From assembly GCA_010909165.1 (NCBI GenBank), contig MU008173.1, positions 1,178,001 to 1,242,000 of the forward strand: DNA of 64,000 nucleotides, read 5' to 3'. The translations under genes were made by a program, and so were the position numbers. This DNA comes from Anthoceros angustus. Its lineage: Eukaryota > Plantae > Anthocerotophyta. This document shows, in pieces, positions 1-54,850 of this stretch. The notes under the pieces are model-generated. The model was not told the DNA's origin. It did no database searches and saw only the letters and a program-made list of their open reading frames with translations. Positions within the stretch are counted from its first letter, which is position 1. Every line of letters starts with the position of its first letter.

Positions 1-24
1 TCATCTTTGCTACTCAAGCAATGT

Positions 25-918
25 TTATAAAAATGTTTCCGGAAACAAGAGCTTCAATCTGGATTTGAGAGACTCTTCAATCGTGGTTGGTTCGGCCATT
101 GCTCCATTTCCGACGTCTCCACAGGCAAGCAATTTCGGGATAGGATTAATTATCATAACACCAAGTTCTTCAAGAACCTTCAAATGCGGCTTGGTAAATG
201 GACTGTCCCACATCAACGTGTTCATAGCAGGAGCAACAAAGAACGGCTTCGAAAAATCCCAAGCTCGCACGATGCAAGTCACTAAATTGTCACAAATGCC
301 ACTTGCAACCTGCAAAAGAACAGAAGCAGTGAGAACATTGAACAGAGCCTTCTCGACACTATGCACCTGCGTACGCTAATAAAACGTAAACGGACTGCGA
401 CCTGCACAAAGTCCTGATGTAGGCCTACATCTCAATATACCAGACACAAGTCTAGCATGTATGAGGACGACACCAAAATACTCTTGCACATAAGGAGGGG
501 TCAAAGTTAGAGTAGATCTCAAATCTTCGACAGTGACAAGAATGTGCGTGACCTCCAACATACTTCGAGACGCCAGTGTGCAATCACAGGGAGCTCTAAC
601 CTTAGCAAGCGTGTTGGCAGAAAGAGGGGCAATGACTAAGGCATCGGCCCATCGCCTGAGCTCGATATGAAGCACAGTGTCCCCTTTCTTCCTCCAACTT
701 AACCACTCGTTCTCATCGGTGTACAATCCAACACCGGGTGACAGAGAGCTGGAGTCGATGAAGTGCAACGCAGACTTGGTGACTACAACGGCTACCTCCG
801 CCCACTGCGAGATGCCGTTAGCAAGCGTAGTGAGCTTTATGGCTGCTACGCTTCCCGTAGCCGCAACGATGACGCGGGGCTTCCTGGGCTCGAAATTGGA
901 ACCGCCGCCAGACGCCAT
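25..918 (-). CDS. HAL3: Phosphopantothenoylcysteine decarboxylase (HAL3/PPCDC flavoprotein), intact, 2 exons (918-601, 309-25), 200 aa
   Basis: Spliced translation MASGGGSNFEPRKPRVIVAATGSVAAIK...VLHIELRRWADALVIAPLSANTLAK|VASGICDNL...PAMNTLMW...LACGDVGNGAMAEP matches plant HAL3 motifs. GT..AG intron 600-310 in phase 0. Catalytic His (VLHIEL) and Cys (ACGD) are present. Confidence 0.94.
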
Positions 919-939
919 GCGGCCACAAAACCTAGCCCT

Positions 940-1245
940 CAAGGCACGCAAGGCGCCGGTCGAGAAGATCCACAAGCGGGATGTCACAAACCTCTTGCCG
1001 AAAGCAAGCATCCAGCTGACACTTCACCACATTGCACTGTCCAAAGAATTTAGCCACCGGATGCTCGTCATCACCACTCTTGAACTGCTTGATGATCTGC
1101 ACAGGCAATTTGCAGACTCCACAAATCGCATCCCAACCGCTGGACATACGAGGCATCCTCAAGCGAGGAAATTCAAACGTCCGAGCAACCACGATGCTTG
1201 TGCAAACCCAGCAACTAGCTGCTGCGGGTTTGCCCTAGATTGCCA
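940..1245 (-). pseudogene. CMC2: Degenerate CMC2 (twin CX9C) copy upstream of intact HAL3
   Basis: Colinear with 54132-54450 but lacks the ATG-containing segment. Exon-2 KRC has become KSG (one Cys lost). The whole of exon 3 plus part of the spacer is deleted (junction near 935-940). Confidence 0.82.
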
Positions 1246-1737
1246 CCTAGGTGTGATAGGGTACTTAACCTGTTTTTATTTTTAACTAAAGCCAAACTTC
1301 TAGTTTTCTAAATCGCGATAAGAGTTTCCATGCTCCTTCTTATCTCGTGGCAACACACTATCGGAAGTTGTTTTTGAGACGGCAGATTGTGCTTTGAGCT
1401 TGAGAATTTCTTGTCTTGGTAATGATATTGTTGCACCATTTGTGGCTGCAAAGGAGTTTCTCAATAGTCTAGAGGTCGATGTGATCGTTCCTTCAACCTT
1501 CCTGCTTGGAAAGGATTTTTGGTAGAGAGCACATATTGATTATGACTTTTCACTCCATGGATGATCGCCTCCAGTCATAACCACGAGCATAAGCGTATCA
1601 AACCACACCGCCAAGGAAGACTGGTAGCAATCAACAGCTGCATACACACGGATGCAGCTGAAAAGGAGGCTTACTCACTTGGCAGCGAGAAGTCCTTTGC
1701 TTCCAGTTGTTAAATAGAGCATTGCAGACGGACAACT

Positions 1738-1880
1738 CAATTACATATCAATGAGGATCTTACACCATTGTACTGGAAGGCTAAGAAGGAGAAGTTACTC
1801 GCTTTTAAAGCTACTCGTGCTCCAATCAAGAGGCTTTCTTTCGTGGGGACGATTTGGTGGTGTTTAGCCCATTTTCATTG
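1738..1880 (+). mobile_element. Possible LINE ORF1-like remnant
   Basis: Reads QLHINEDLTPLYWKAKKEKLLAFKA. An INEDLT-type motif is typical of LINE ORF1p C-termini. Short and unsupported otherwise. Confidence 0.3.
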
Positions 1881-1958
1881 ACATTGTTGGTTGATTGAAG
1901 ATTATTTGTCTTGTTTGAATTTTACCTTTGCATTCGTCTAGACCATTTTACCACAATC

Positions 1959-2427
1959 CATGTAGTTGCCATATTTCAGTCCCACAACGGAAATCCGTCA
2001 TTAGTGAACTTCAATAAAATTCTTCTTCTACTACTAACTTATGACAAATTTATCGTGATCTCGTCCTCCCCTTTTAATACCTACATTTTACATAATTTCT
2101 AAACGAAGGAACCTTCAAGTAAGGTCTATCGTCTTCGACAATACTCATACATACAGTAACAACCTATGTGGCCATACTTGAAATCCTGCTCATATATAGA
2201 GACTAGGTCATTGCTCAAACTCCTACTCTTTACTATTATATTCTATTATAGGAGAAAGAATTTCATTAATGAATTATTATTTTACATTAACCTCCAATAC
2301 AAGCAAACAAGTTTATTGAAAATGCAGCAAACAAGTTTATTGAAAATGCGATGTAGAAGAAGAAAAATTGTATTTAAGTTCACTAAGGACGGTTTCCGTC
2401 ATGGGACTGAAATATGGCAACTACATG
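1959..2427. repeat. Inverted pair (about 75 bp arms) of the stem-loop/AATAAAA/(TTC)n module
   Basis: 1959-2035 CATGTAGTTGCCATATTTCAGTCCC..CGGAAATCCGTC..AATAAAATTCTTCTTC is the reverse complement of about 2350-2427. No TSD found. Confidence 0.75.
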
Positions 2428-6100: not shown

Positions 6101-8743
6101 CTGTCGCCGCCCTTGCATCACACTCTTGCTTACGATGTGTATCATGTGCCCGAAATGACAAGAAACTTGATTGCTAGAAGGTTGAATATGGATAATCAAA
6201 GTCACATCCTCTTCACTCCGAGAATGTAGGATTATAGATGCTTTTGATCATCGCAAAATCCTAGCCTATGGATCATCGACCATGATCTCTTTAGATTGCA
6301 CACCACGCCACCTAGCTTCAAAGTCCTACGTTCGAGACAACAGTAGCAGAAGAAGAAGCTAGGTTATGGCATGCACGCTTAGGTCACCCTCACGAAAGTT
6401 GCAAAAACTAGTTGCTAGTGACCTATCTGATGGTAAAATTGGCGCTTGCCACCCTTACCTCTCTGTGAAGCGTCTGTCCAAACGTCATCACAACCTTCAA
6501 GAACAAGCTCCTCACGAGCTTCCGAAGTGCTTGAACTTGTGCACATCGACATATGTGGGCCACTCACCCTCAATTGGTGGTGGCCGATACTTACTGCATT
6601 TGACAAGACGAGATTTGTCATGGCTTACATCTTAAAAGCTAAAAGTGAATGTTTCTCTTTGTTCAAAGACTACATGAAACTTGTAGAGAGATGGATGTGA
6701 AATCGAAAGTCCTACGTTCGATAATGGTGGAGAATTCACATCCAATGAATTTCACACCTACTGCAAGGACGAAAGGATATGCAGACAACTTACAGTGTAT
6801 ACGCTGCAATAGAATGGCGTTGCCAAGCGCTTGAACTTGATCTTACAGGAGATGGTCTCCTCTATGCTTCACCAAGCCTCTTTGCCACTATCCTACTGGG
6901 CTGAAGCCCTTATGACAGCTGTGTATCTACGTAACATACAAAACTTGAAGATGAAAGAAGGAGAATCTATTGAAAACACTTGACTACCTTTAGATCTCTA
7001 GTCTCCAAGTTTGAAAGTGCCGCAGATGTGAAGGATCGGGGCTCTCATCCTTCATTTTCCTCGATGTCACTCCAGTCTTGGTCACATTTCGTGACCTCTT
7101 TTCAACACCTCGCAACTGCTAAGGAAAATCGCCAAGGTGCGTGTGTTGACCTCCCAAAACCACATTTGCGAATTAGTGGGCGCACTTCTTGGGAAGAAGT
7201 AACAGAGATGCTTTAAGCGTGCAAATGTAAAGAAGCTTTGTACACCAACAACAAAGGAAAGGGCAAAAGCCCAACTTCGAGGTAGAGAATACCTCAAGTG
7301 CTAGCACTCGGAGCTTCTACGAAGAAGCCAAGAAGGCCGGAAAATGCCACTGGTGCCAAATTCCGTGCCATTGGGAGGCAGTGTCGAAGAAGCGATGAGT
7401 TCCTAAGGAGGGCAACTCCACTTCACGACACATGTTGTGGTGACCAAACAAGGCTCTCACCATGTAGGGACCAGGAGTTTTCTTCTCACCCTCTAACCCC
7501 ACATGCTTGTTTGCAAATACCAAGGCAAACCCATACAAGTGGTTCCTTGATACAGTGCAACGCATCCGTTTTCTTTAAGTTATCATTCACCACATATGAG
7601 TTAGTTCAAAACATATTTGTTTACCTAGGTGACGATAGCAGGCTTGTGTGCCCTGGTGTTGCCACAGTCAAGCTGTCAGTCCCTTCAGGCATCACGCTCT
7701 TGCTTACAGACGTGTATCATGTGCCTGAAATGACCAGAAACTTGATTTCTGTTAGGAGGTTGAATATGGATAATCATAGTCACATCCTCTTCACTCCGAC
7801 AGAATGTAGGATTATAGATGCTTTTGATCATCGTAAAATCCTAGCCTATGGATCATCAGACCATGATCTGTTTAGATTGCACACTCACATCAGTCACGCC
7901 AACGCCAGCCTAGCTTCAAAGTCGCAGACAACAGGGTGGAAGAGTAGGTTATGGCATGTACGATTAGGTCACCCTCACAGCGCAAAGTTGCAAAAACTAG
8001 TTGCTAGTGACCTATACGGTGATGGTAAAATTGGCGCTTGCCACCCTTACCTCTGTGAAGCTGTATGTCATCCAACGTCATCAAGCGACCTTCAAGAACA
8101 AGGCTCCTCACGAGCTTGAGTGCTTGAACTGCTCGACATATGTGGGCCACTCTCACAGCCCTCAATTGGTGGTGGCAGATACTTCCTTACATTCACAGAC
8201 GACAAGACGAGATTTGTCATGGCTTACATCTTAAAAGCTAAAAGTGAATGTTTCTCTTTGTTCAAAGACTACATGAAACTTGTAGAGAGATGGACAGGGA
8301 AATCGCTGAAAGTCCTACGTTCAGACAATGGTGGAGAATTCACATCCAATGAATTTCACACCTACTGCAAGGACGAAGGGATATGCAGACAACTTACAGT
8401 TGTGTATACGCTGCAATAGAATGGCGTTGCCAAGCGCTTGAACTTGATCTTACAGGAGATGGTCTCCTCTATGCTTCACCAAGCCTCTTTTACTATCCTC
8501 GGGTGAAGCCCTTATGACATGTATCGTAACATACGCCCTACAAGCTGCCGTGCTAGGACAGACCCCCTTTGAAGCTTTCTATGGCAGGAAGCCAGCTATC
8601 CAACATCTTCGCACTTTCGGATGCATCGCTTATGCCTTCATCCCTAAGGTCAAGAGGACCAAGTTAGCTGCCAAAGCCAAGAAATACCTCATGTTAGGGT
8701 ATACTGAAGGTATAAAAGCCTACAAGCTATATGATGTACCTCA

Positions 8744-11700
8744 AACAGTGTTTCTCAGCATAGGGGTTTGTCTCCGAACCCCATTTTGGCCCCAACCATC
8801 CAGAAATGCACATGTCTCATTTCACTGCTTTGATGAACCACAGCCCATGCATCCGAGCCCAAGAAGACCTAATGCCCACCGTCCGCACAAATGCGGACAC
8901 ACCTTTGTACCAAGTGGCGGATACTTCCTTACATTCTGCAACGACGAGATTTGTCATGGCTTACATCTTAAAAGCTAAAAGTGAATGTTTCTCTTTGTTC
9001 AAAGACTACATGAAACTTGTAGAGAGATGGATGGAAATCGAAAGTCCTACGTTCGAGACAATGGTGGAGAATTCACATCCAATGAATTTCACACTCACCA
9101 AGGCGAAGGATATGCGACGACAACTTTCTGATTGTGTACTGCAATAGAATGGCGTTACGCTTGAACTTGATCTTCGGAGATGGTCTCCTCTATGCTTCAC
9201 CAAGCCTCTTTGCCACTATCCTCGGTCAAGCCCTTACTGTGTTATGTATCGTAACATACACAAGCTGCGTGCTAGGGCAGACCCCTTTGAAGCTTATGGC
9301 GAGGCGACTATCCAACATCTTCGCACTTTCGGATGCATCGCTTATGCCTTCATCCCTAAGGTCAAGAGGACCAAGTTAGCTGCCAAAGCCAAGAAATACC
9401 TCATGTTAGTATATCTTGAAGGTATAAAGCCTACAAGCTATATGATGTACCTCAAACAGAGCATATAGGGTTTGTCTCCGAACCCCATTTTGGCCCCAAC
9501 CATCCGTAAATGCACATGTCTCATTTCACTGCTTTGATGAACCACAGCCCATGCATCCGAGCCCAAAGAAGACCTAATGCCCACCGTCCGCACAAATGCG
9601 GACACACCTTTGTACCAAGTGGCGGATACTTCCTTACATTCTGCAACGACGAGATTTGTCATGGCTTACATCTTAAAAGCTAAAAGTGAATGTTTCTCTT
9701 TGTTCAAAGACTACATGAAACTTGTAGAGAGATGGATGGAAATCGAAAGTCCTACGTTCGACAATGGTGGAGAATTCACATCCAATGAATTTCACACTCA
9801 CCAAGGCGAAGGATATGCGACGACAACTTTCTGATTGTGTACTGCAATAGAATGGCGTTACGCTTGAACTTGATCTTCGGAGATGGTCTCCTCTATGCTT
9901 CACCAAGCCTCTTTGCCACTATCCTCGGTCAAGCCCTTACTGTGTTATGTATCGTAACATACACAAGCTGCGTGCTAGGGCAGACCCCTTTGAAGCTTAT
10001 GGCGAGGCGACTATCCAACATCTTCGCACTTTCGGATGCATCGCTTATGCCTTCATCCCTAAGGTCAAGAGGACCAAGTTAGCTGCCAAAGCCAAGAAAT
10101 ACCTCATGTTAGTATATCTTGAAGGTATAAAGCCTACAAGCTATGATGTACCTCAAGCAGAGCCGGCATAGGGTTTGTCTCGAACCCCATTTTGGCTAAC
10201 CATCCGAAATGCACATGTCTCATTTCCTTTGTTTTCAATGATTTGCGAACCCACAGCCCATGCATCCGAGCCCAAAGAAGACCTAATAGTATGCCACAAA
10301 TGCGGACACACCTTTGTACCAAGTGGTAGGATGGTAGCACTTATGCTCCAAAGAGCGGAGTGCGCCAACGTCCGACTTATACTCCAAAGAGGTGCAATAC
10401 ACCGGGTTTGGAGAGGGTTGCGTCAATACTTGTGTAGGCAAGCACTTTCGCTCAAGTTGCTTGTGCACACTTGCCACCGCACCAACACTCACATCAATTC
10501 TCTTTTCAAACCCCGTGATTGAGCAATCCCGGATGGCGGGCATACCATCGACTGGCCCCTCGTGTCGGAGATAAGCCGCACTTAGATCTGCGGCATTGGG
10601 CGAAATTGGGTAAAGGATGGTGAGGCCTCCTCAACCGTTCTTGATCAAACTCTTGAGCTTACATTTCTTCTTGTCAAGTCCATCCGCTTTCAACCTTAAT
10701 CTATCCATGGGTGGCACATGGAGCAAGTCGGATCTTAAATTCAAAATCTCTGGCGAAGCTTGGCTATAGTTCTCTGAACACCTAGCCATTTGTAGTGGGC
10801 GTCACGGTGGGTATAGAGCGGTCCTCCTTGAGCCTCATGAAATACTCACCATTTGGTCAAAACCCCACTCGGGCGACCCCTCTTTCTTCAGATACTCTGG
10901 CTCTCACTAGGGCTCGCGGTGGCGAGCGGATGCTCTCTTATACTTGTGTTCATCAAGCAGGCTTACTCAAGGAAAATCATCTATTCTATTTATTTTCTTG
11001 CTTCTCTGCAAAACATTGTGAAACATTATCGTCTTCAAAAGGTTGGCCATTAGAAACCACCATCATACATGTCGAATTTTGGAAAATGTAGCTCATCTAG
11101 AAACCAAGGCCTATGCATCTATCGTGCATCAAACTCGAATGAGCGGACATTTGGCGCACCAATCAAAGAGATCCAAATGCAAGTCATCGGAAGGGCACAT
11201 AGAGTAAGGCCAAAAGGTTTTACATGTTGTATACAAAGCGAATGTGGGAATATAACATCAACCAACAAATGATTTTCAAAAATAATATTCATGACTTTAC
11301 GCCTAGATCTGGGATGATTTACAAATTTTTCAAACCACTAAAATCAACACTCCATCCTAGTATTGATACGCCTCTAGGTTGTATGTGGAGTTGTTACAAA
11401 GTTTTCAAAGCGCCAAAAACAAGCAACCATCCTAGTACTAATCCGACCCAAGAGTGCTTAACAAGTTCTAAAGCACCAAAGTCAAGCACCCCATCCTAGT
11501 ACTAATCCGACCCAAGAGTGCTTAACCTTGGAGTTCTTATGCCATTGAGTCTATCTGCACCTATCCCGAGATATGCTTAAAGACAAACAATATATATATA
11601 TATTTGCGGGGCGTACATCCACCATTTCCATCTCTGGCGCCCACAAGATTGGGGTCTCTCAAAAAATGCGCCGACGCAGGCTTTAGCAGACTCGCGCCAA

Positions 11701-16629: not shown

Positions 16630-16735
16630 GAAGAAGAAGAAGAAGAATTTTATTTAAGTCCACTAAGGACGGATTTCCGTCATGGGACTTGGTACTGCAT
16701 AACTTGGACCATGTTGTGCCTAAGGTATACTCGGC
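16630..16735 (-). mobile_element. LINE-type 3' end module (stem-loop, AATAAAA, (TTC)n)
   Basis: Reverse strand CTTAGGCACAACATGGTCCAAGTT..GTACCAAGTCCCATGACGGAAATCCGTCCTTAGTGGACTTAAATAAAATTCTTCTTCTTC closely matches 51240-51331. Confidence 0.7.
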
Positions 16736-40537: not shown

Positions 40538-42360
40538 CCTCACCGATATTTGGACGCTGGCTCCAAAGTCTATTTTGGAACCGATGACACAAGTCAAATG
40601 AGATCAACATACAAAACTTGAAGATGAAAGAAGGAGAATCCATTGAAAACACGACTACCTTGGATCCCTAGTCTCCAAGTTTGAAAGTGCACAGGATAGT
40701 GTGAAGGACCGCTCTCATTCGCATTTCATGATGTCACTCCTCGAATCTTGGGCACATTTCGTGACCTCATTCAACACCTCGCAACTACAAGGGCGGAAGA
40801 TTGCCCAGTGCAGTGTTGATCTCCCAAAACAACATTTGCAATTAGTGGGAGCTCTTCTTCGTGAAGAAGTCACAAGAGGACAATTCAAACGTCGTAAAAT
40901 GCAAGCTTTGTACACTAACAACAAAGGAAAGGGCAAGAAGCCCAACTGAGGTAGACAAAATACCTGTGCTAGTAGCTCGCAAGGAGTCTCTACACCAAGA
41001 AGCCCAAGAAGGCTGGAAAGTGCCACCGTGCCAAATTCGAGGCCATTGGGAGTCCGAGTGTCGAAGAAGCGAGTACCTCGCAAGGAGGGCAACTCCACTT
41101 CTCGACACATGTTGTGGTGACTAAACAAGGCTCTACTGCACCTCACCGATATTTGGACGCTGCTCCAAAGTCTATTTCCGGAACCGATGACACAAGTCAA
41201 ATGACAAAGACTTCGCAACATACAAAACTTGAAGATGAAAGAAGGAGAATCCATTGAAAACACGACTACCTTCGATCCCTAGTCTCCAAGTTTGAAAGTG
41301 CATGTGATAGTGTGAAGGACCGTGCTCTCATTCTTCATTTCATGATGTCACTCGAATCTTGGGCACATTTCGTGACCTCATTCAACACCTCGCAACTACA
41401 AGGGCGGAAGATTGCCCAGCGCAGTGTTGATCTCCCAAAACAACATTTGCAATTAGTGGGAGCTCTTCTTCGTGAAGAAGTCACAAGAGGACAATTCAAA
41501 CGTCGTAAAATGCAAGCTTTGTACACTAACAACAAAGGAAAGGGCAAGAAGCCCAACTGAGGTAGACAAAATACCTGTGCTAGTAGCTCGCAAGGAGTCT
41601 CTACACCAAGAAGCCCAAGAAGGCTGGAAAGTGCCACCGTGCCAAATTCGAGGCCATTGGGAGTCCGAGTGTCGAAGAAGCGAGTACCTCGCAAGGAGGG
41701 CAACTCCACTTCTCGACACATGTTGTGGTGACTAAACAAGGCTCTACTGCACCTCACCGATATTTGGACGCTGCTCCAAAGTCTATTTCCGGAACCGATG
41801 ACACAAGTCAAATGACAAAGACTTGCAACATACAAAACTTGAAGATGAAAGAAGGAGAATCCATTGAAAACACGACTACCTTCGATCCCTAGTCTCCAAG
41901 TTTGAAAGTGCATGTGATAGTGTGAAGGACCGTGCTCTCATTCTTCATTTCATGATGTCACTCGAATCTTGGGCACATTTCGTGACCTCATTCAACACCT
42001 CGCAACTACAAGGGCGGAAGATTGCCCAGCGCAGTGTTGATCTCCCAAAACAACATTTGCAATTAGTGGGAGCTCTTCTTGAAGAAGTCACAAGAGGACA
42101 ATTCAAACGTCTGGTAAATGCAAGCTTTGTACACTAACAACAAAGGAAAGGGCAAGAAGCCCAACTCGAGGTAGACAAAATACCTCGTGCTAGTAGCTCG
42201 CAAGGAGCCTCTACACCAAGAAGCCCAAGAAGGCGGAAAGTGCCACCGTGCCAAATTCCGTGCCATTGGGAGTCTGAGTGTCGAAAGAAGCGAGTACCTC
42301 GCAAGGAGGGCAACTCCACTTCTCAGACACATGTTGTGGTGACTAAACAAGGCTCGGCTG
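40538..42360. repeat. About 600-bp gag segment in three tandem copies inside A2
   Basis: Units start at 40538, 41141 and 41752 with the identical junction CCTCACCG. Confidence 0.92.
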
Positions 42361-45300
42361 CAGCCCTCACTGTAGGGACCAGGGAGTTTTCCTACCCTCT
42401 TGCTAACCCCACATGCTTGTCTGCAAATACTCAAGGCAAACCCATACAGGAGTGGTTCCTTGATACAGGTGCAACAGCGCACATCTGTTTCGACAGAAGT
42501 TCATTCGTCACATACAGGTTAGTTCACAACAGATTTGTTTACCTAGGTGACGATAGTAGGCTTGCGTGCTCTGGTGTTGGCACCGTCAAGCTACCTGTCC
42601 CTTCAGGCATCACACTCTTGCTTACAGATGTGTATCATGTGCCTGAAATGACAAGAAACTTGATTTCTAATAGAAGGTTGAACATGGATAATCAAAGTCA
42701 CATCCTCTTCACTCCGATGTAATGTAGGATTATAGATGCTTTTGATCATCGCAAAATCCTAGCCTATGGATCATCTCGACCATGATCTCTTTAGATCGCA
42801 CACTCACACCATCATGCCAAGGCTAGCCTAGCTTCAAGGTCGCTCGAGAGCAAAGCAAGAAGAACAAGCTAGGTTATGGCATGCACGCTTAGGTCACCCT
42901 CACAGAAAGTTGCAAAAACTAGTCGCTAGTGACTGTGTTGATGGTAAAATTGGCGCTTGCCATCCTTACCTCTCGTGAAGCCTGTGCTGTCCAAACGTCA
43001 TCAAGCCTTCAAGAACAAGACTCCTCACGAGCTTCCAAGTGCTTGAACTTGTGCACATCGACATATGTGGGCCACTCCCTCAATCGGTGGTGGCGATACT
43101 TCCTTACATTCACAGACGACAAGACGAGATTTGTCATGGCTTACATCTTGAAAGCTAAAAGTGAATGCTTCTCTCTGTTCAAAGACTACATGAAACTTGC
43201 AGAGAGATGGACAGGAAAATCGCTGAAAGTCCTACGTTCAGACAATGGTGGAGAATTCACATCTAATGAATTCCAGACCTACTGTAAGGACGAAGGGATA
43301 GGCAGACAACTTACAGTTGTGTATACGCCGCAACAGAATGGCGTTGCCGAGCGCTTGAACTTGACACTGCAGGAGATGGTCTCCTCTATGCTTCACCAAG
43401 CCTCTTTGCCACTATCCTACTGGGCTGAAGCCCTTATGACAGCTGTGTATTTACGTAATGATCGCCTACACCGCTGCGTGATTGGATGACCCCTTTGAAG
43501 CTTTCTATGGCAAGCCGCCTATCCAACATCTTCGCACTTTCGGATGCATCGCTTTTGCTTTCATCCCTAAGGCCAAGCGAACCAAGTTAGTCGCTAAGGC
43601 CAAGAAGTACCTCATGATAGGATACATCAAGGTATAAAAGCTTATAAGTCGTATGACGACTCGAACAAGGTGGTCTATGCACGAGCGTGACCTTTGATGA
43701 AGGTCGAACTTGGCAGCAAGTGGGAGCTACTCCCACACAGGAGGACTTTGATCTTTCTGCCTTGCCTGACGTCACTGTTTTCGATGATTCTGCTCTTGCG
43801 GAGATTGCTCCTGCAGGGGGGGAAGAACAACAGCAAAATGATGCTCAGGAGCAAGGAGATGAACCAGAAAATTTTGCTGAACATTTGCAGCAGCAACCTC
43901 CTCCAGTTGCAGAACCTGAACCAGCTGACCTTTTACCTGATCCACCAGACCCCGATCCAGACATTGACGAGGATGAGGCTGAAGATGCTCATCTTCTTGA
44001 CAGTGATGCCGAGGTTGAACCTGAGATTCAACCCTTGCCTAAAGCTCCACCACAACCTGAGCGCCGTTATCCTGCAAGAGATAGATGGGCACCGACATCA
44101 AGGACTTTAGAAAACCAACAGCTAATGCAGCCACTTCGGATCCTATCGAACCTCAATCCTACGAAGAAGCTCTTAGTCCCGATGCCGCAGAGTGGAAAAG
44201 GCAATTCAATTAGAATATGATTCACGATCAAAATGGAACATGGGAACTAGCTAAGTTACCTGGACGTAAGGTGGTGTCTTGCAAGTGGGTCTTCAAAGCG
44301 AAGGTAAAGGCTGATGGAAGTTTTGATAGGTACAAAGCACGACTTGTAGCTCGTGGTTTTCGCAAGTGCCCGGTCTCGATTACTTCAAACATATGCTCTG
44401 TGATGAAGCCGCCACCTTTCGCACAACTGCCTCGGCAAGACATCAAGACTACGAGTTAGACATGTTTGATGTAAAGACCGCATTTTACATGGCAAGTTGG
44501 ACACAAATCTACATGCAGCCCTCGGGATACAAGTAAAAGGCAAGGAAGATCATGTCTTGCGCCTAATAAAACCCTCTATGGCTCAAGCAATCAAGATTAG
44601 AGTGGAATCTTCTGGATGAAGAACTGCGTGCACTTGGATTCGTGAAATGTGTTTGAGACTGTATGTTTACAGATCCGTGACGTTGTGTGCTATCTCGCAG
44701 GTGTATGTTGATGATTTGATTCTATCCCGCAATAGCCCCACATTCATCACCAAAGTTAACAAGTCGCTATCTACCAAGTTTGAAATGACTAACCTTGGAG
44801 CACTTGAGCTCGGGAATCCTTATTCGAGGGATAGAAAAACAGATCTATATCTCTCACACCTCGATACTGCTAGAATGTGACGCTTGGCTTGAAGGATGCA
44901 ACCAGCGACTCCACCGCCATCCGGATCGAAATTTAGCAAGTCCATGTGTCCCGAAACCAAAAAGGACATAGAAGACATGAGGTCGGTCCCCTACAGAAAG
45001 GGAGTTGGCAAACTTATCTATGCTGCCAACACTACACGACCTGATGTAGCCTACACCACAAGTGTGCTCTCGCAATACCTCGAGAACCCTGGTCAAACGC
45101 ACAGGACTGGTGTTAAGAGGGTGGTTAGGTATCTGAAGGGAACATCCAACATTGGGATTCGATTCAGACACATACCTGGCACACCACTTGAGCTGGACGT
45201 ATATACTGACTCGATTATGCTGGTGACATAGATACACGGAGGTCGTTGTCCGGGTGTCATGGTGGCGGAGGGCCCATATGCTGGTCAAGCAAGAAGCAAC

Positions 45301-48961: not shown

Positions 48962-51331
48962 ATGCCACTATTTCACTTTTGCCATGCTATCTTCTGCACA
49001 TAAAATCTTTCTCCCTAAACCTTGTCATCCTGTCAAGCTCTCCAACACTACTCCTCGCCACCCTTGGTTTGATGATGAATGCAAACATCTCCGCTTTCAC
49101 ACTCACAAGTGCCTCCGTGCTCTCAATGTCTCATCCAAGTCTCATCATTCACCGCTGTACAAGGCAATTGTCAAGCCTTATAAGGCTCTTATTGCTGTCA
49201 AAAAGTCTGCTTTCTTTTCCTCCCAGCGTGATCGCCTCTTGAGGCTTCTCAGAGAATCTCCTGGTGGTGGTGCTTTTTGGAAGGAGTTCCACTTTCATCG
49301 AACCATCTTATTGGAGGCCTCTCTTGAGCTTATCTATCATGTGCAAACTCTCTTCTTCCGAGAATCTGTTCCCCCTCTTGCGAGATCTCAGGATCCTGGG
49401 AGCTATTCACTCTTGACCTCATTCTGGGGGCCATCAACAAACTCAGATTTGGGAGAGCCTCTGACCCTGAAGATATCCCTGGAGAACTTTTCTCCTATGC
49501 AGCTCCTACTGTTATTGCCCCTCCCTTAGCTGCTTTGTTCAATGAGGCTTTAGTCCATGGATATCATGAGGCATGGTGTTGGAATGACATCCATTCCATC
49601 TTCAAGACAGGTGATCCACAGCTCCCGCCCAACTACAGGTATATCATGGTTGAGTCCATCTTTGCCAAGATCTTTAGCGCATGCTTGGAAATTCTCACTA
49701 CTTCTTGGGCCGAGAATGCTGGGATCAGAGCACAAGGCCAAGCTGGGTTTCGTCCGGAGCGGAATACCTCAGGATAATCTTTTCACACTCATTGCTATTA
49801 TTCAGGAGGCCAAGAGCAGGTGGAAGGACGATCGACATGTTTATGTCTGTTTTGTTGATTTCAAGAGAGCTTTCGACTCTATCTCCCGCGAGAAGCTCTT
49901 TGCCCGGCTTCATAGGTTGGGGTTGCCTGCTCATCTTTTACATGCCATACAGGTTCTCTATGAAAAGGTGAAGGCCAAGATCCGCACTCCCTATGCTGCT
50001 TTTGACCTTTTGGATTTGCTTTGCAATTTGGGAGTCTTGATCATCCATCTTCTCCCAACTTATTTGGCTTATTCATTGATGAGCTGGAGTCTTGGATTTG
50101 TCGGGGACCACAGGCCTCCTCTCCTTGGTATATATTGCTATTCTCCTATATGCAGATGACATTGCTCTTTTGTCCCATTCTCCTGAGGGCCTCCAACAAC
50201 AACTAGACACATTGTCCCGCTTCTCCGCAGCAAGAGATTTGGAAGTGAACTTGAAGAAGACCAAGGTCATGTTTTTCAACCGGCGGGATGCTGTTGAGCA
50301 CAATTTGAAGTTCTTCTATAATGGTGAACCTGTGGAGGTTGTTCGATCTTATGTCTACCTAGGAGGCACTCTCTATGGCCCAACACTTCAGTGGAAGCTC
50401 TCTGCCTCTACTCGCATGTCAAGGGTGTGGCATCTGCTTGTGGGGGTCAGAGACAGTCCTCTAGGATGCACATCAAGGACATCCCCACTCGGCAATGGCT
50501 CTTCAACACCGTTGTTGTTCTTTCGGCTATGTATGCGGCTGAGCAAGTCCTCCACTCTATCCCACCAAATGATGGCGACATTAGACAACAACGGAGTGCA
50601 TTTCCCTTCAATACTTCTCTGCCGATAACAATAGAAGATAATGTCAAATCAAGGATTTTGAAAGGACCTTGCGGTGGTTCCTGTACCTCCCACCCGATCG
50701 GCAGGTCAAGACTAGCTGATGCTTCTACACTCATAGATTGAAATGTTCGACACCCGATGGATCGGCGTTCACATTGAGTGCGCAATTGGTGAAGGCGCTC
50801 GCGAGTTTGAGCATGTAATGTACGTGCAATAAATAGCCTAATAGTGTTCATACATCGTGAACCATCCGTGAACGGGATTACAGTTTTGTAAGGCTTAATT
50901 ACATACGATGCTTGGATGGATGTATGGCCACAGCATTAGGGGATGCACCGGCATCCCGGTGGTAACGGGCAACCGGAGTATGAGTGGTGGGGCCCACGTC
51001 TGCACACACGCGCGCATTAATAACTTGACGAGTTTTAGGAACCGCTTACCTAGTGGCTGAGCTGAACAGAAACAGTTAAGAAATTGAAGGATATTTAAAC
51101 TTTCTTATTAAGGTTGTATGAGGTCCAAATGGCTTAGGCCAAATGGACACACATTTATAAGAACGCCGTGATTAAGCATCCTGAGCTTAGAGTACTTAGA
51201 TGGGGTGCCTAAAGGGAGTGGATGCCCTTGGTGCAAGTAGCTTAGGCACACCATGGTACAAGTTGTTAAGTACCAAGTCCCGTGACGGAAATCCGTCCTA
51301 AGTGGACTTCAATAAAATTCTCTTCTTCTTC
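48962..51331 (+). mobile_element. 5'-truncated non-LTR retrotransposon (LINE) with RT domain and structured 3' end
   Basis: PWFDDEC, QAGFR, FVDFKRAFDS, LLYADDIAL, VNLKKTKVM across frameshifted ORFs. 3' end GACGGAAATCCGTC hairpin (51284-51297), AATAAAA, (TTC)n. Clade (RTE-X/L1-like) not determined. Confidence 0.9.
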
Positions 51332-52846: not shown

Positions 52847-53084
52847 CAGGAAATTTCAAAAGGATCTGGCGCTCGAACTGTCACCACCACCTTCACTGAA
52901 GAGTATAGCCCAAGTTCTGTTATCGCGCGATTCACGAAACCCAACTTGCTCTTGCTCCGGATATTCCGCCACGACTTCCACCAGCTGCTTACACACCGTA
53001 CGCATCCGCCCTTGCGGTAGTCTTTTGGTACCCTAAACTCGTAGAGACAGATTCTCGTCTTTACTACACAAGCGACTTCCTTGA

Positions 53085-53940
53085 CAGTATTTCCGGAACC
53101 AGGAGCTTCAACAGGAAGCGTGGTTCGGGCAATGGCTCCGTTTCGGAGTTCTCCAAGGCAAGCAATTTCGGAATAGGATTAATTATCATAACTCCAAGTT
53201 CTTCAAGATCCTTCAAATGCGGCTTGCTGGATGGAATGTCCCAACGTCAAAGAACGGCTTCGAAAAATCCCAAGCTCGCACAATGCAAGTTACCAAATTG
53301 TTACGAATGCCACTTGCAACCTGCAAACGAACAGAAGCAGTGAGAACATTGCACTGAGCCTTCTCTCGACACTATGCACCTGCGTACGCTAATAAAACGT
53401 AAACGGACTGCGACCTGCACAAGGGTGGCCTGCACAAAGTCCTGATGTAGGCCTACATCTCAGTATACCAGACACAAGTCTAGCATGCATGAGGACGAGA
53501 CCAAAATACTCTTGCACATAAGGAGGGGTCAAAGTTAGAGTAGATCTCAAATCTTCGACAGTGACAAAAATGTGCGTGACCTCTGACACACATCAAGACG
53601 CCAGTGCGCAATCACAGGGAGCTCTGACCTTAGCAAGCGTGTTGGCAGAAAGAGGGGCAATGCCTAAGGCATCGGCCCATCGCCTAAGCTCGGTATGAAG
53701 CACAGTGTCCCCTTTCTTCCTCCAACTTTGACCACTCGTTCTCATCGGTGTACAATCCAACACCGGGTGACAGAGAGCTGGATCGGTGTACAATCCAGCC
53801 TTGGGTGACAGACAGCTGGATCGACGTACAATCCAACACTGAGCAAGGGCAGTGAGCTTTGTGGCTGCCACGCTTCCCGTGGCCGCAACGATGACGCGGG
53901 GCTTCCTTGGCTCGGAATCGGAACCACCACCAGACGCCAT
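53085..53940 (-). pseudogene. HAL3: HAL3/PPCDC pseudogene
   Basis: Paralogue of 25-918. About 70 bp of exon 1 is replaced by a 38-bp tandem triplication (53744-53840). ICDN has become IRNN, the PAMN motif is deleted with frameshift, and the ACGD Cys region is destroyed. Confidence 0.88.
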
Positions 53941-53986
53941 GCGGCCACAAAACCTAGTCCCCACAAGACTGCATATAGCAGTGTCC

Positions 53987-54417
53987 TCAGGCGTCAGCCA
54001 CGGTTTGCCCGGCAGCGGGGACCGCAGCCTGCGCTCTTCTGGCACGGAGCCGTTCCTGCGACTTCCTGCTTGCTTCAAGGTTAGCTGCCCGCTTCACCTC
54101 TTTCTGCACGGCAGAGCAGAAAATCAGCTGCCAAGGCACGCAAGGCGCCGGTCGAGAGGATCCACAAGCGGGATGTCACAAACCTCTTGCCGAAAGCAAG
54201 CATCCAGCTGATACTTCAGCACATTGCACTCTCCAAAGAATTTAGCCACCGGATGCTCGTCATGACACCTCTTGAACTGCTTGATGATCTGCACAGGCAA
54301 TTTGCAGACTTCACCCATCGCATCCCAAGCCCTGCACATACAAGGCATCCTTAAGGAAGGCAATGCACTTACGTCCGAGCAACCAGGATGCTTGTGCAAA
54401 ACCAGCTGCGGATGCAT
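53987..54417 (-). CDS. CMC2: CMC2/Cmc1-like twin CX9C mitochondrial cytochrome c oxidase assembly protein, 3 exons (54417-54373, 54288-54184, 54103-53987), 88 aa
   Basis: MHPQLVLHKHPGCSDIIKQFKRCHDEHPVAKFFGECNVLKYQLDACFRQEKEVKRAANLEASRKSQERLRARRAQAAVPAAGQTVADA*; two exact CX9C motifs; canonical splice sites. Confidence 0.92.
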
Positions 54418-54850
54418 GACGGCGCCAAAGGCTGGCCCTAGACTGCCACCTGGGTCTGTACCAGCCCACCTGGTTGGAGGCCGACGTCGTAAACTGGCTG
54501 AAAGGTGAAACACCAGTGAGAGGGATCTATAATTCTATATAGACGAAAACTCAATTTAACATTCCAGGTGTCACGGCCGGGAGTCAAACTCATGCCCTTT
54601 CTGTCTGGAGCCTTAGACCACAAGGCCAAACCGTCCCGGTGTCTATTAACTGATTTTTTTTATAAACATGAATGTTTGAAAACCGCGTTGACCAATACTA
54701 CTACATCTCCAGTTGTCTACACAAAGAACGCAATCCGTGTTTGAAAAGACAGCTTTAACAGTACCAGTTTCGAGAATCGCTATTAGGTACACACAGCTAC
54801 AACGAGAGCGTGTAGTTGTGGCTCCTTTTTTCTTCGTGTCTCCAGATTAC

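What the first reader, a model, noticed from the sequence alone, without database searches (positions are those of the whole stretch)
25..1245. Reciprocal degeneration of a duplicated CMC2-HAL3 unit (possible fission of a two-gene locus)
The same CMC2+HAL3 cassette occurs twice, both on the minus strand and about 53 kb apart (25-1245 and 53085-54450). Here HAL3 is intact, while CMC2 has lost its ATG, one CX9C Cys and all of exon 3. In the other copy CMC2 is intact, while HAL3 has lost the ICDN Cys, PAMN and ACGD motifs. These lesions are read directly from the sequence. The inference is duplication-degeneration-complementation acting on whole cistrons, freeing each gene from a shared transcript.
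Basis: partly seen in the sequence, partly recalled or inferred. Interest (0 to 1): 0.8.

Follow-up and report, generated by a model that had tools for sequence, protein, structure and literature searches.

The report
Two-gene locus split by duplication
An ancient two-gene unit (CMC2, a mitochondrial assembly factor, followed by HAL3, a coenzyme-A enzyme) was duplicated in this seedless land plant, and each copy then lost the opposite gene, so both copies are now needed.

Summary
Two direct copies of a CMC2+HAL3 unit lie on the minus strand about 53 kb apart, 92-95% identical in their best-kept blocks.

- **Copy A (25-1250):** HAL3 is intact, 200 aa, with His90, PAMN and Cys175 in place. CMC2 has lost its ATG, its GTAAGT donor, one CX9C cysteine and all of exon 3.
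- **Copy B (53085-54455):** CMC2 is intact, 88 aa, with a twin CX9C. HAL3 has lost its conserved core and the PAMN and ACGD motifs, and stops early.
- **Independent contigs:** short-read DNA contigs hold both forms at about 10x each.
- **RNA contigs:** they show HAL3-A spliced behind the CMC2 relic. They also show CMC2-B spliced and running on into dead HAL3-B.
- **Relatives:** a related species has one contig with exon 3, the ancestral cysteine codon and none of copy B's large deletions. CMC2 lies directly upstream of HAL3 in Marchantia, Sphagnum, another moss and an unnamed relative (probably a land plant or alga).
- **Literature:** a 'CMC2/COAC1' bicistron is already listed for green algae (Dupuis 2025).

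Duplication followed by reciprocal cistron loss is therefore well supported. The transcripts, however, still carry the dead partner. Other, more diverged copies elsewhere in the genome were not excluded. An earlier agent of this scan reached the same reading from copy B of this window (s1-258045).

The parts
25..309 (-). HAL3-A exon 2 (94 aa plus stop), intact: ICDN, PAMN and ACGD present
   Evidence: Colinear with AtHAL3a residues 113-192 in 1E20. RNA contig without mismatch (record 10).
310..600 (-). HAL3-A intron (GT..AG), removed in RNA
   Evidence: Joint 306/598 with ends CT..AC on the + strand, and zero RNA depth over 321-560.
601..918 (-). HAL3-A exon 1 (106 aa), intact, His90 equivalent kept
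   Evidence: Aligned to 1MVL residues 14-112.
919..991 (-). Relic of the spacer (919-939) and of the 5' part of CMC2 intron 2 (940-991). The exon-3 deletion junction lies at about 935-940.
   Evidence: DNA and RNA contigs of copy A span it exactly (records 5 and 12).
992..1096 (-). CMC2-A pseudo-exon 2: six amino-acid changes, CX9C Cys lost, now part of the HAL3-A leader
   Evidence: Pfam Cmc1 scores only 17.6 bits, below the cut-off of 22. RNA contig 724-1069 is exact.
1097..1250 (-). Relic of CMC2 intron 1 and exon 1 (ATG deleted, donor GTAAGT changed to GTTTGA), and the upstream end of the homology
53085..53320 (-). HAL3-B pseudo-exon 2: Cys-to-Arg in ICDN, 22-base and 21-base deletions, stop after 35 codons
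53321..53628 (-). HAL3-B intron, 4.8% different from that of copy A
53629..53940 (-). HAL3-B pseudo-exon 1: frame open but conserved core replaced. The tandem 38-base repeat lies at 53744-53839.
   Evidence: Transcribed behind CMC2-B (record 13).
53941..53986 (-). 46-base spacer between the CMC2-B stop and the HAL3-B ATG
53987..54103 (-). CMC2-B exon 3 (38 aa plus stop)
   Evidence: Joined to exon 2 in RNA with the 80-base intron removed (146 against 226 letters).
54184..54288 (-). CMC2-B exon 2 (35 aa), holds the CX9C cysteines
   Evidence: Pfam Cmc1 at E 6e-8.
54373..54417 (-). CMC2-B exon 1 (15 aa, starts MHPQL)
   Evidence: Same 15-codon exon in Marchantia, Sphagnum and another moss.

Best explanation
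**Ancestral state.** CMC2 followed by HAL3 (also called PPCDC or COAC) is an old green-lineage transcription unit. It consists of a small three-exon ORF for a twin-CX9C mitochondrial assembly factor, a short spacer, and then the ORF of phosphopantothenoylcysteine decarboxylase.

**What happened here.** In this organism's lineage the whole unit, introns included, was copied by a DNA-level duplication about 53 kb away. This happened at roughly 5% neutral divergence ago. The copied segment started only about 40 bases upstream of the CMC2 ATG.

**Reciprocal decay.** Once both genes were redundant, each copy decayed in a different cistron.
- Copy A lost CMC2: the start codon, the splice donor, one cysteine and exon 3.
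- Copy B lost HAL3: the core is replaced by a slipped tandem repeat, there are frameshifting deletions, and the catalytic motifs are gone.

**Consequence.** Each essential gene now has only one working copy on this stretch, so both loci are locked in. This is the logic of duplication-degeneration-complementation, applied to whole cistrons. The bicistron has in effect become two one-protein genes. Both still transcribe the dead partner: HAL3-A has the CMC2 relic as its 5' leader, and CMC2-B has dead HAL3 as its 3' trailer.

**Shown:** the duplication, the lesions, their derived state, the unduplicated unit in relatives, and splicing and transcription at contig level.

**Inferred:** that the ancestor used a single mRNA in this lineage, that no other functional copy exists, and that the two survivors are functional.
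For: - **Duplication and lesions:**
- **HAL3-A looks functional:** it is colinear with AtHAL3a in 1E20 and 1MVL over residues 14-192, with His90, PAMN and Cys175 kept.
- **Reads:**
  - DNA contigs specific to copy A and to copy B each have about 10x depth, the same as the unique flank.
  - RNA run X2 has no depth in the introns and a GT..AG joint for the HAL3-A intron.
  - One exact copy-A RNA contig covers 724-1069.
  - A copy-B RNA contig joins CMC2 exon 2 to exon 3 (80-base intron removed) and runs on into HAL3-B exon 1.
- **Related species X3:** one contig at flat depth 11.3. It has the 174-letter exon-3 block and copy-B-like (ancestral) letters at 1027, 1039, 1072, 1075 and 1076. It has only 15 gaps over HAL3.
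- **Constraint:** CMC2 exon 2 shows 6 non-synonymous and 0 synonymous differences, at least 5 of them derived in copy A. The alignable parts of HAL3 show 8 non-synonymous and 10 synonymous differences.
- **Adjacency elsewhere:**
  - Marchantia (L012).
  - Sphagnum, with an annotated 88-aa Cmc1 gene 107 bases upstream (L014).
  - Another moss (L007/L009).
  - L008, an unnamed relative.
  - Green algae, as 'CMC2/COAC1' (PMC11892635).
Against: - Paralogues below 85% DNA identity were invisible to the read laying, and the whole genome could not be searched. A third functional HAL3 or CMC2 is therefore not excluded.
- A third, partial HAL3 exon-2 copy lies just outside the window (records 1 and 9). 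The history is more complex than one clean duplication.
- RNA evidence comes from assembled contigs, which show neither transcript ends nor single molecules.
- Copy A is about as far from the related species' contig as from copy B. The duplication may therefore predate that species split, with later loss in the relative.
- Reciprocal loss is one of two equally likely outcomes for two independent genes, so it needs no special selective explanation.
Confidence: 0.78

Rival explanations
1. Ordinary pseudogene decay without complementation. The organism has further functional CMC2 and/or HAL3 genes elsewhere, so the two lesioned copies are simply decaying duplicates. Their reciprocal pattern would then be a coincidence with no consequence.
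For: - Only copies at 85% DNA identity or more could be seen.
- Land plants often have two HAL3 genes (two Ceratopteris and two Cryptomeria entries).
- A third exon-2 fragment exists.
Against: - The surviving cistrons are perfectly intact and spliced, and are present in RNA contigs at depths of 50-67.
- All catalytic residues of HAL3-A are kept.
- No other HAL3 or CMC2 note exists among about 1970 noted windows of this genome. This is weak evidence.
Confidence: 0.12
2. Assembly artefact. The two copies are diverged haplotypes, or a collapsed or mis-joined repeat, and the lesions are consensus errors.
For: - The best DNA run may be the sample the assembly came from, so it is not fully independent.
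- One base (137) differs between that run and the window.
Against: - Independently built short-read contigs reproduce both forms, including the deletion junction of copy A and the 174-letter block of copy B. Each has about 10x depth, like the unique flank.
- The flanks of the two copies are unrelated.
- RNA contigs carry both forms.
Confidence: 0.03
3. The dead cistrons are kept because they now act as regulatory RNA. The CMC2 relic would act as an upstream ORF or leader that tunes HAL3-A translation. The HAL3 relic would act as a 3' UTR of CMC2-B. The pattern would then be functional remodelling rather than plain decay.
For: - The copy-A leader keeps a 74-codon ORF that ends 13 bases before the HAL3 ATG, and an in-frame ATG at 1011.
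- HAL3-B exon 1 is still an open frame.
- Both relics are transcribed.
Against: - The relics carry deletions, a slipped repeat and an excess of amino-acid changes, as expected for neutral decay.
- At about 5% divergence, open frames can persist by chance.
Confidence: 0.07

Closest known systems
CMC2/COAC1 bicistronic locus of green algae (Auxenochlorella protothecoides UTEX250_A10.26400/26395, colinear in other chlorophytes; Dupuis et al. 2025, PMC11892635, Datasets S2 and S5)
   Same: Same two protein families (Cmc1-like, then PPC decarboxylase), in the same order, on the same strand, with a short spacer.
   Different: - In the alga one locus encodes both proteins, with a spacer of 2 bases.
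- Here the unit is duplicated, each copy encodes only one of the two, and the spacer is 46 bases.
- Presence in bryophytes is not mentioned in that paper's main text.
Gene fission by duplication and complementary partial degeneration (the monkey-king family of Drosophila, Wang et al. 2004; recalled from memory, not read here)
   Same: A composite locus is duplicated and each copy loses a different part, leaving two simpler genes that together replace the ancestor.
   Different: There, one fused ORF was split. Here, two separate ORFs of a two-protein transcription unit are partitioned, and both relics are still visible and transcribed.
Duplication-degeneration-complementation and reciprocal gene loss after duplication (Force et al. 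1999; recalled from memory)
   Same: Complementary loss makes both duplicates indispensable.
   Different: The classical model partitions regulatory subfunctions of one gene. Here the units are whole cistrons.
CDC26-TTM3 bicistron of plants and algae (cited in PMC11892635)
   Same: A small upstream ORF and an enzyme ORF on one conserved plant transcript.
   Different: Different genes, and no duplication-split has been described for it in what was read.

Membership tests
HAL3 / phosphopantothenoylcysteine decarboxylase (Pfam Flavoprotein PF02441) | Flavoprotein domain over the whole protein | tested here: met
   Copy A exon 1 scores E 6.7e-18 (profile positions 2-76) and exon 2 scores E 2.7e-5 (profile positions 77-157), which together are contiguous.
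HAL3 / phosphopantothenoylcysteine decarboxylase (Pfam Flavoprotein PF02441) | Catalytic His90, the PAMN(xxMW) substrate motif and Cys175 of AtHAL3a (their roles are recalled from the literature on 1E20 and 1MVL) | tested here: met
   Copy A aligns with 1MVL and 1E20 residues 14-192 without gaps. H84 aligns to His90, PAMN to residues 139-142, and C63 of exon 2 to Cys175. In copy B, PAMN and ACGD are lost and a stop follows.
HAL3 / phosphopantothenoylcysteine decarboxylase (Pfam Flavoprotein PF02441) | Decarboxylase activity | not testable with these tools
   Needs an enzyme assay or complementation.
CMC2 (Cmc1-like twin CX9C protein, PF08583) | Cmc1 domain above Pfam's cut-off | tested here: met
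   Copy B exon 2 scores 33 bits against a cut-off of 22. The copy A relic scores 17.6 bits, below the cut-off.
CMC2 (Cmc1-like twin CX9C protein, PF08583) | Two C-x9-C motifs | tested here: met
   Copy B has C13..C23 and C36..C46 across exons 1 and 2. Copy A has lost C23 (Cys to Gly).
CMC2 (Cmc1-like twin CX9C protein, PF08583) | Orthology to CMC2 rather than CMC1 | tested here: inconclusive
   - It has the same position and the same 15+35+38-codon structure as the Cmc1-family gene upstream of HAL3 in Sphagnum (88 aa), Marchantia and another moss.
- The algal partner is named CMC2 by Dupuis et al..
- No tree was built. The word-based protein search found nothing.
Green-lineage CMC2-HAL3 bicistron | Same-strand adjacency with a short spacer | tested here: met
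   Spacers are 46 bases (copy B), 76 (L008), 82 (another moss), 107 (Sphagnum) and 159 (Marchantia).
Green-lineage CMC2-HAL3 bicistron | Both ORFs on one mRNA | tested here: inconclusive
   One RNA contig joins spliced CMC2-B to HAL3-B exon 1, and another joins the CMC2-A relic to HAL3-A. A contig is not a single molecule.
Fission by duplication and complementary degeneration | Single intact unit in outgroups, two copies here, complementary derived lesions | tested here: met
Fission by duplication and complementary degeneration | No other functional copy of either gene in the genome | tested here: inconclusive
   No third copy at 85% identity or more, except an exon-2 fragment. The whole genome was not searchable.

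The most novel reading that the evidence does not exclude
This locus may be a snapshot of the general route by which land plants dissolved algal-type bicistrons into separate genes: duplication followed by reciprocal cistron death. The relics may not be inert. The exon-3 deletion in copy A put an upstream ATG (1011) in frame with HAL3. That adds a 31-residue leader with 7 basic and no acidic residues, which resembles an organelle-targeting peptide. A second, relocated HAL3 isoform may therefore have arisen from the wreck of CMC2.
Probability: 0.1. Interest if true: 0.75.

Novelty: new variant of a known kind. Interest (0 to 1): 0.55.

Why it matters
Two-protein messenger RNAs are common in green algae and rare in seed plants, and how they were lost is not known. 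Here the intermediate state is still readable: both daughter loci, their complementary lesions, and RNAs that still drag the dead partner along.

Comparative evidence fits repeated, lineage-specific break-up of this unit.
- The unit is intact in Marchantia, Sphagnum and another moss.
- It is absent at the Physcomitrium, Selaginella and angiosperm HAL3 loci examined.

The case gives a concrete, testable system for several questions: what happens to translation of a downstream ORF when the upstream ORF dies, what happens in the reverse case, and how duplication can lock in two copies of a small locus.

Tried and rejected
- **Paper searches.** Searches for CMC2+HAL3, for PPC decarboxylase+bicistronic, and for bicistronic+hornwort found nothing relevant. 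Gallaher 2021 does not mention the pair in its main text, and its supplements are not held.
- **CMC2 protein search.** The word-based search with the CMC2 reading frame (ATG through the open intron 1 to the stop in intron 2) found no candidates.
- **Reaching beyond the window's left edge.** I tried this by looking up the exon-1 ORF (379-1011), which is not on record. The third exon-2 fragment could therefore not be read.
- **Cluster look-up.** It gave no names for the unnamed relatives.
- **tRNA-like string.** A string upstream of copy B (about 54560-54650) is not a tRNA by ARAGORN.
- **Loci without CMC2.** Angiosperm-like loci L001-L006, L003, Physcomitrium (L010/L011) and Selaginella (L013) have no CMC2 upstream of HAL3 even at relaxed thresholds.
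- **Retrocopy origin rejected.** Both copies keep their introns.
- **Spliced models.** They were searched exon by exon, by reference.
- **Not used.** The large representative search and structure prediction were not needed.

Full report
**1. What is in the sequence**

The window is eukaryotic, with spliced genes, GT..AG introns and 37-66% G+C in 2-kb windows.

MAFFT and the repeat finder show two direct copies of about 1.3 kb on the minus strand, at 1-1250 and 53000-54455. The best blocks are 92-95% identical and the spacing is about 53.1 kb. Homology starts only about 40 bases upstream of the CMC2 start. At the other end it runs to the window's first base, so the downstream end of copy A is cut by the window.

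**2. Gene models (minus strand)**

Copy A:
- HAL3 exon 1 is 918-601 (106 codons). The intron is 600-310. Exon 2 is 309-25 (94 codons plus stop).
- Both exons match Pfam Flavoprotein over contiguous profile positions.
- They align without gaps to residues 14-112 and 113-192 of Arabidopsis HAL3a in 1E20 and 1MVL. His90, the PAMN motif and Cys175 are all kept.
- Upstream lies a wrecked CMC2:
  - The start codon is gone through a 9-base deletion.
  - The donor GTAAGT now reads GTTTGA.
  - Exon 2 (1096-992) has six amino-acid changes, including KRCH to KSGD, which removes a CX9C cysteine.
  - About 170 bases are deleted, covering the end of intron 2, all of exon 3 and half of the spacer.

Copy B:
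- CMC2 is intact. Exons are 54417-54373, 54288-54184 and 54103-53987, giving 88 aa with two C-x9-C motifs and a Pfam Cmc1 match.
- The HAL3 ATG follows 46 bases later at 53940, but this HAL3 is dead.
  - Exon 1 is still open, but its 22-residue conserved core is replaced by 2.5 copies of a 38-base unit.
  - Exon 2 has Cys-to-Arg in ICDN, a 22-base deletion that removes PAMN, a stop after 35 codons, and a second 21-base deletion.

**3. The lesions are real, not assembly errors**

I laid Logan contigs of four public runs on window 1-2400 at 85% likeness.

- **DNA run X1 (same organism).**
  - One contig spans the exon-3 deletion of copy A exactly (724-996).
  - The copy-B form appears as a joint with 174 extra letters.
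  - Contigs specific to either copy have a depth of about 10, the same as the unique flank (1089-1442 and 2161-2321).
  - This argues against collapsed repeats or half-depth haplotypes.
- **Run X2 (same sample) behaves as RNA.**
  - It has no depth over the HAL3-A intron or over the relic of CMC2 intron 1.
  - It has a joint at 306/598 with GT..AG ends.
  - One exact copy-A RNA contig covers 724-1069. HAL3-A messages therefore carry at least pseudo-exon 2 of CMC2 as leader.
  - A copy-B RNA contig links CMC2 exon 2 to exon 3 and continues through the spacer into HAL3-B exon 1. It has 146 letters where the genome has 226, so the 80-base intron is removed.
  - Both survivors are thus transcribed and spliced, and both still drag the dead partner.
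  - Contigs cannot show transcript ends or single molecules.

**4. Direction of change**

A related species (run X3) gives one 2544-base contig at a flat depth of 11.3.
- It covers 12-1212 and carries the 174-letter block.
- It has copy-B-like letters at 1027, 1039, 1072, 1075 and 1076. These correspond to the Leu, Glu and Arg-Cys-His states.
- It has two extra bases at the damaged donor.
- It has only 15 gaps over HAL3, too few to include either of copy B's deletions.
- The small gaps of copy B's exon 1 (754-811) are also absent from it.

This relative therefore appears to hold a single unit with neither set of lesions. The lesions of copies A and B are both derived.

Rates:
- CMC2 exon 2 differs between A and B at 6 non-synonymous and 0 synonymous sites.
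- The alignable parts of HAL3 show 8 non-synonymous and 10 synonymous differences.
- The HAL3 introns differ by 4.8%. With a borrowed plant substitution rate this suggests a few million years, which is inference.
- Copy A is about as far from the relative's contig as from copy B. The duplication is therefore about as old as that species split and could predate it.

**5. The unit is ancient**

- **Green algae.** The supplement of Dupuis et al. 2025 (PMC11892635) lists an Auxenochlorella bicistron named 'CMC2/COAC1'. It pairs a Cmc1-like protein with a PPC decarboxylase and has colinear pairs in five other chlorophytes.
- **Bryophytes and others, from my own tblastn on fetched loci.**
  - *Same arrangement.* Each of these loci has the same three-exon CMC2 directly upstream of HAL3:
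    - Marchantia polymorpha (L012, spacer 159 bases).
    - Sphagnum troendelagicum (L014), where an 88-aa Cmc1 gene is annotated 107 bases upstream.
    - An unnamed moss (L007/L009, 82 bases), whose HAL3 is 82% identical to that of Physcomitrium.
  - *Partly fused form.* The unnamed relative L008 has a CMC2 in which exons 2 and 3 are fused, 76 bases upstream of HAL3.
- **Loci where CMC2 is not upstream of HAL3.**
  - The Physcomitrium patens locus and its transcript contig.
  - Selaginella, where hexokinase ends 64 bases upstream.
  - Several angiosperm-like loci.

The unit also seems to have been broken several times independently.

**6. Mechanism and its rivals**

The simplest account has three steps.
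- A DNA-level duplication copied the whole unit. The introns are kept, so it is not a retrocopy.
- Both genes were then briefly redundant.
- Each copy then lost a different cistron, which makes both copies necessary.

Reciprocal loss is one of two equally likely outcomes for two independent genes, so it needs no special force. What is notable is that the ancestor was a two-protein unit and both halves of the split are still legible.

Rivals:
- A further functional paralogue elsewhere would make the pattern inconsequential. This is not excluded, because paralogues below 85% identity and the rest of the genome were out of reach.
- Assembly artefact is unlikely for the reasons in section 3.
- The relics might be kept as regulatory RNA. 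This is possible but unsupported.

**7. Identity of the organism**

HAL3-A is 62-73% identical to every named land-plant and charophyte HAL3 and close to none. Earlier notes of this scan call the genome a probable hornwort. I did not verify this independently.

**8. Relation to earlier work of this scan**

Note s1-258045, on copy B of this same window, reached the same reading: a split remnant of a CMC2-HAL3 bicistron.

I then tested its claims about algae, mosses and liverworts myself. They hold, with the exception that the Physcomitrium locus lacks CMC2.

**9. Procedure notes**

Noticed in passing
Just left of window position 1 (outside the window); seen through, records 1 and 9: - A third, partial HAL3 exon-2 copy, with its splice acceptor, lies about 32 bases beyond the window start, downstream of HAL3-A.
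- Compared with exon 2 of copy A it has about 21 substitutions and 21-22 gap letters.
- It is present in DNA (depth about 10) and in RNA (depth about 21).
- The 32 linking letters are absent from the window but resemble copy B's downstream flank.
   Followed up: partly
L009:5220-10700 (unnamed moss, ENA ERZ25073694 ctg130523): - This moss has a second, inverted CMC2 copy (726 bases, 96.6% identical, all three exons).
- That copy is placed directly upstream of a Bud13 gene.
- There is also a second copy of HAL3 exon 2 (282 bases, 97.5%) 1.4 kb downstream of HAL3.
- The CMC2-HAL3 unit has therefore been partly duplicated in another lineage too, possibly giving CMC2 a new downstream partner.
   Followed up: partly
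window 919-1011 (-): - The exon-3 deletion puts an ATG at 1011 in frame with HAL3-A.
- This adds 31 residues with 7 Lys/Arg and no Asp/Glu, which resembles a presequence.
- This ATG lies within the exact copy-A RNA contig.
   Followed up: partly
window 932-1192 (-): The CMC2 relic of copy A is still an open frame (86 codons from GTG, 74 from the ATG at 1156). It reads through the in-frame intron-1 relic and ends 13 bases before the HAL3-A ATG.
   Followed up: partly
window 137: DNA run X1 reads A where the window and RNA run X2 (recorded as the same sample) read G, in both contigs that cover the site. This may be a strain or individual difference; it is unexplained.
   Followed up: no
window 1360-2080 and 1959-2034 / 2353-2427: - Directly upstream of copy A lie very high-copy repeats, with DNA contig depth up to about 12,000 against about 10 for unique sequence.
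- There is also a pair of 76-base inverted repeats, with relatives at 16632-16689 and 51276-51329. This is probably a MITE family.
- The original promoter of copy A may have been displaced.
   Followed up: no
HAL3 exons versus intron, copy A against copy B: Synonymous sites of the alignable HAL3 codons differ by about 15% (10 of about 66 sites), but the intron differs by only 4.8% (14 of 291). Several changes are C-to-T at CpG. This is unexplained; it may reflect methylated gene-body CpGs or conversion in the intron.
   Followed up: no
window 40604-42260, 8583-10148, and 7583-8477 vs 42501-43394: There are tandem arrays with periods of 611 and about 705 bases, and dispersed repeats at 90-94% identity between the two HAL3/CMC2 copies. 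This is probably transposon material and was not examined.
   Followed up: no
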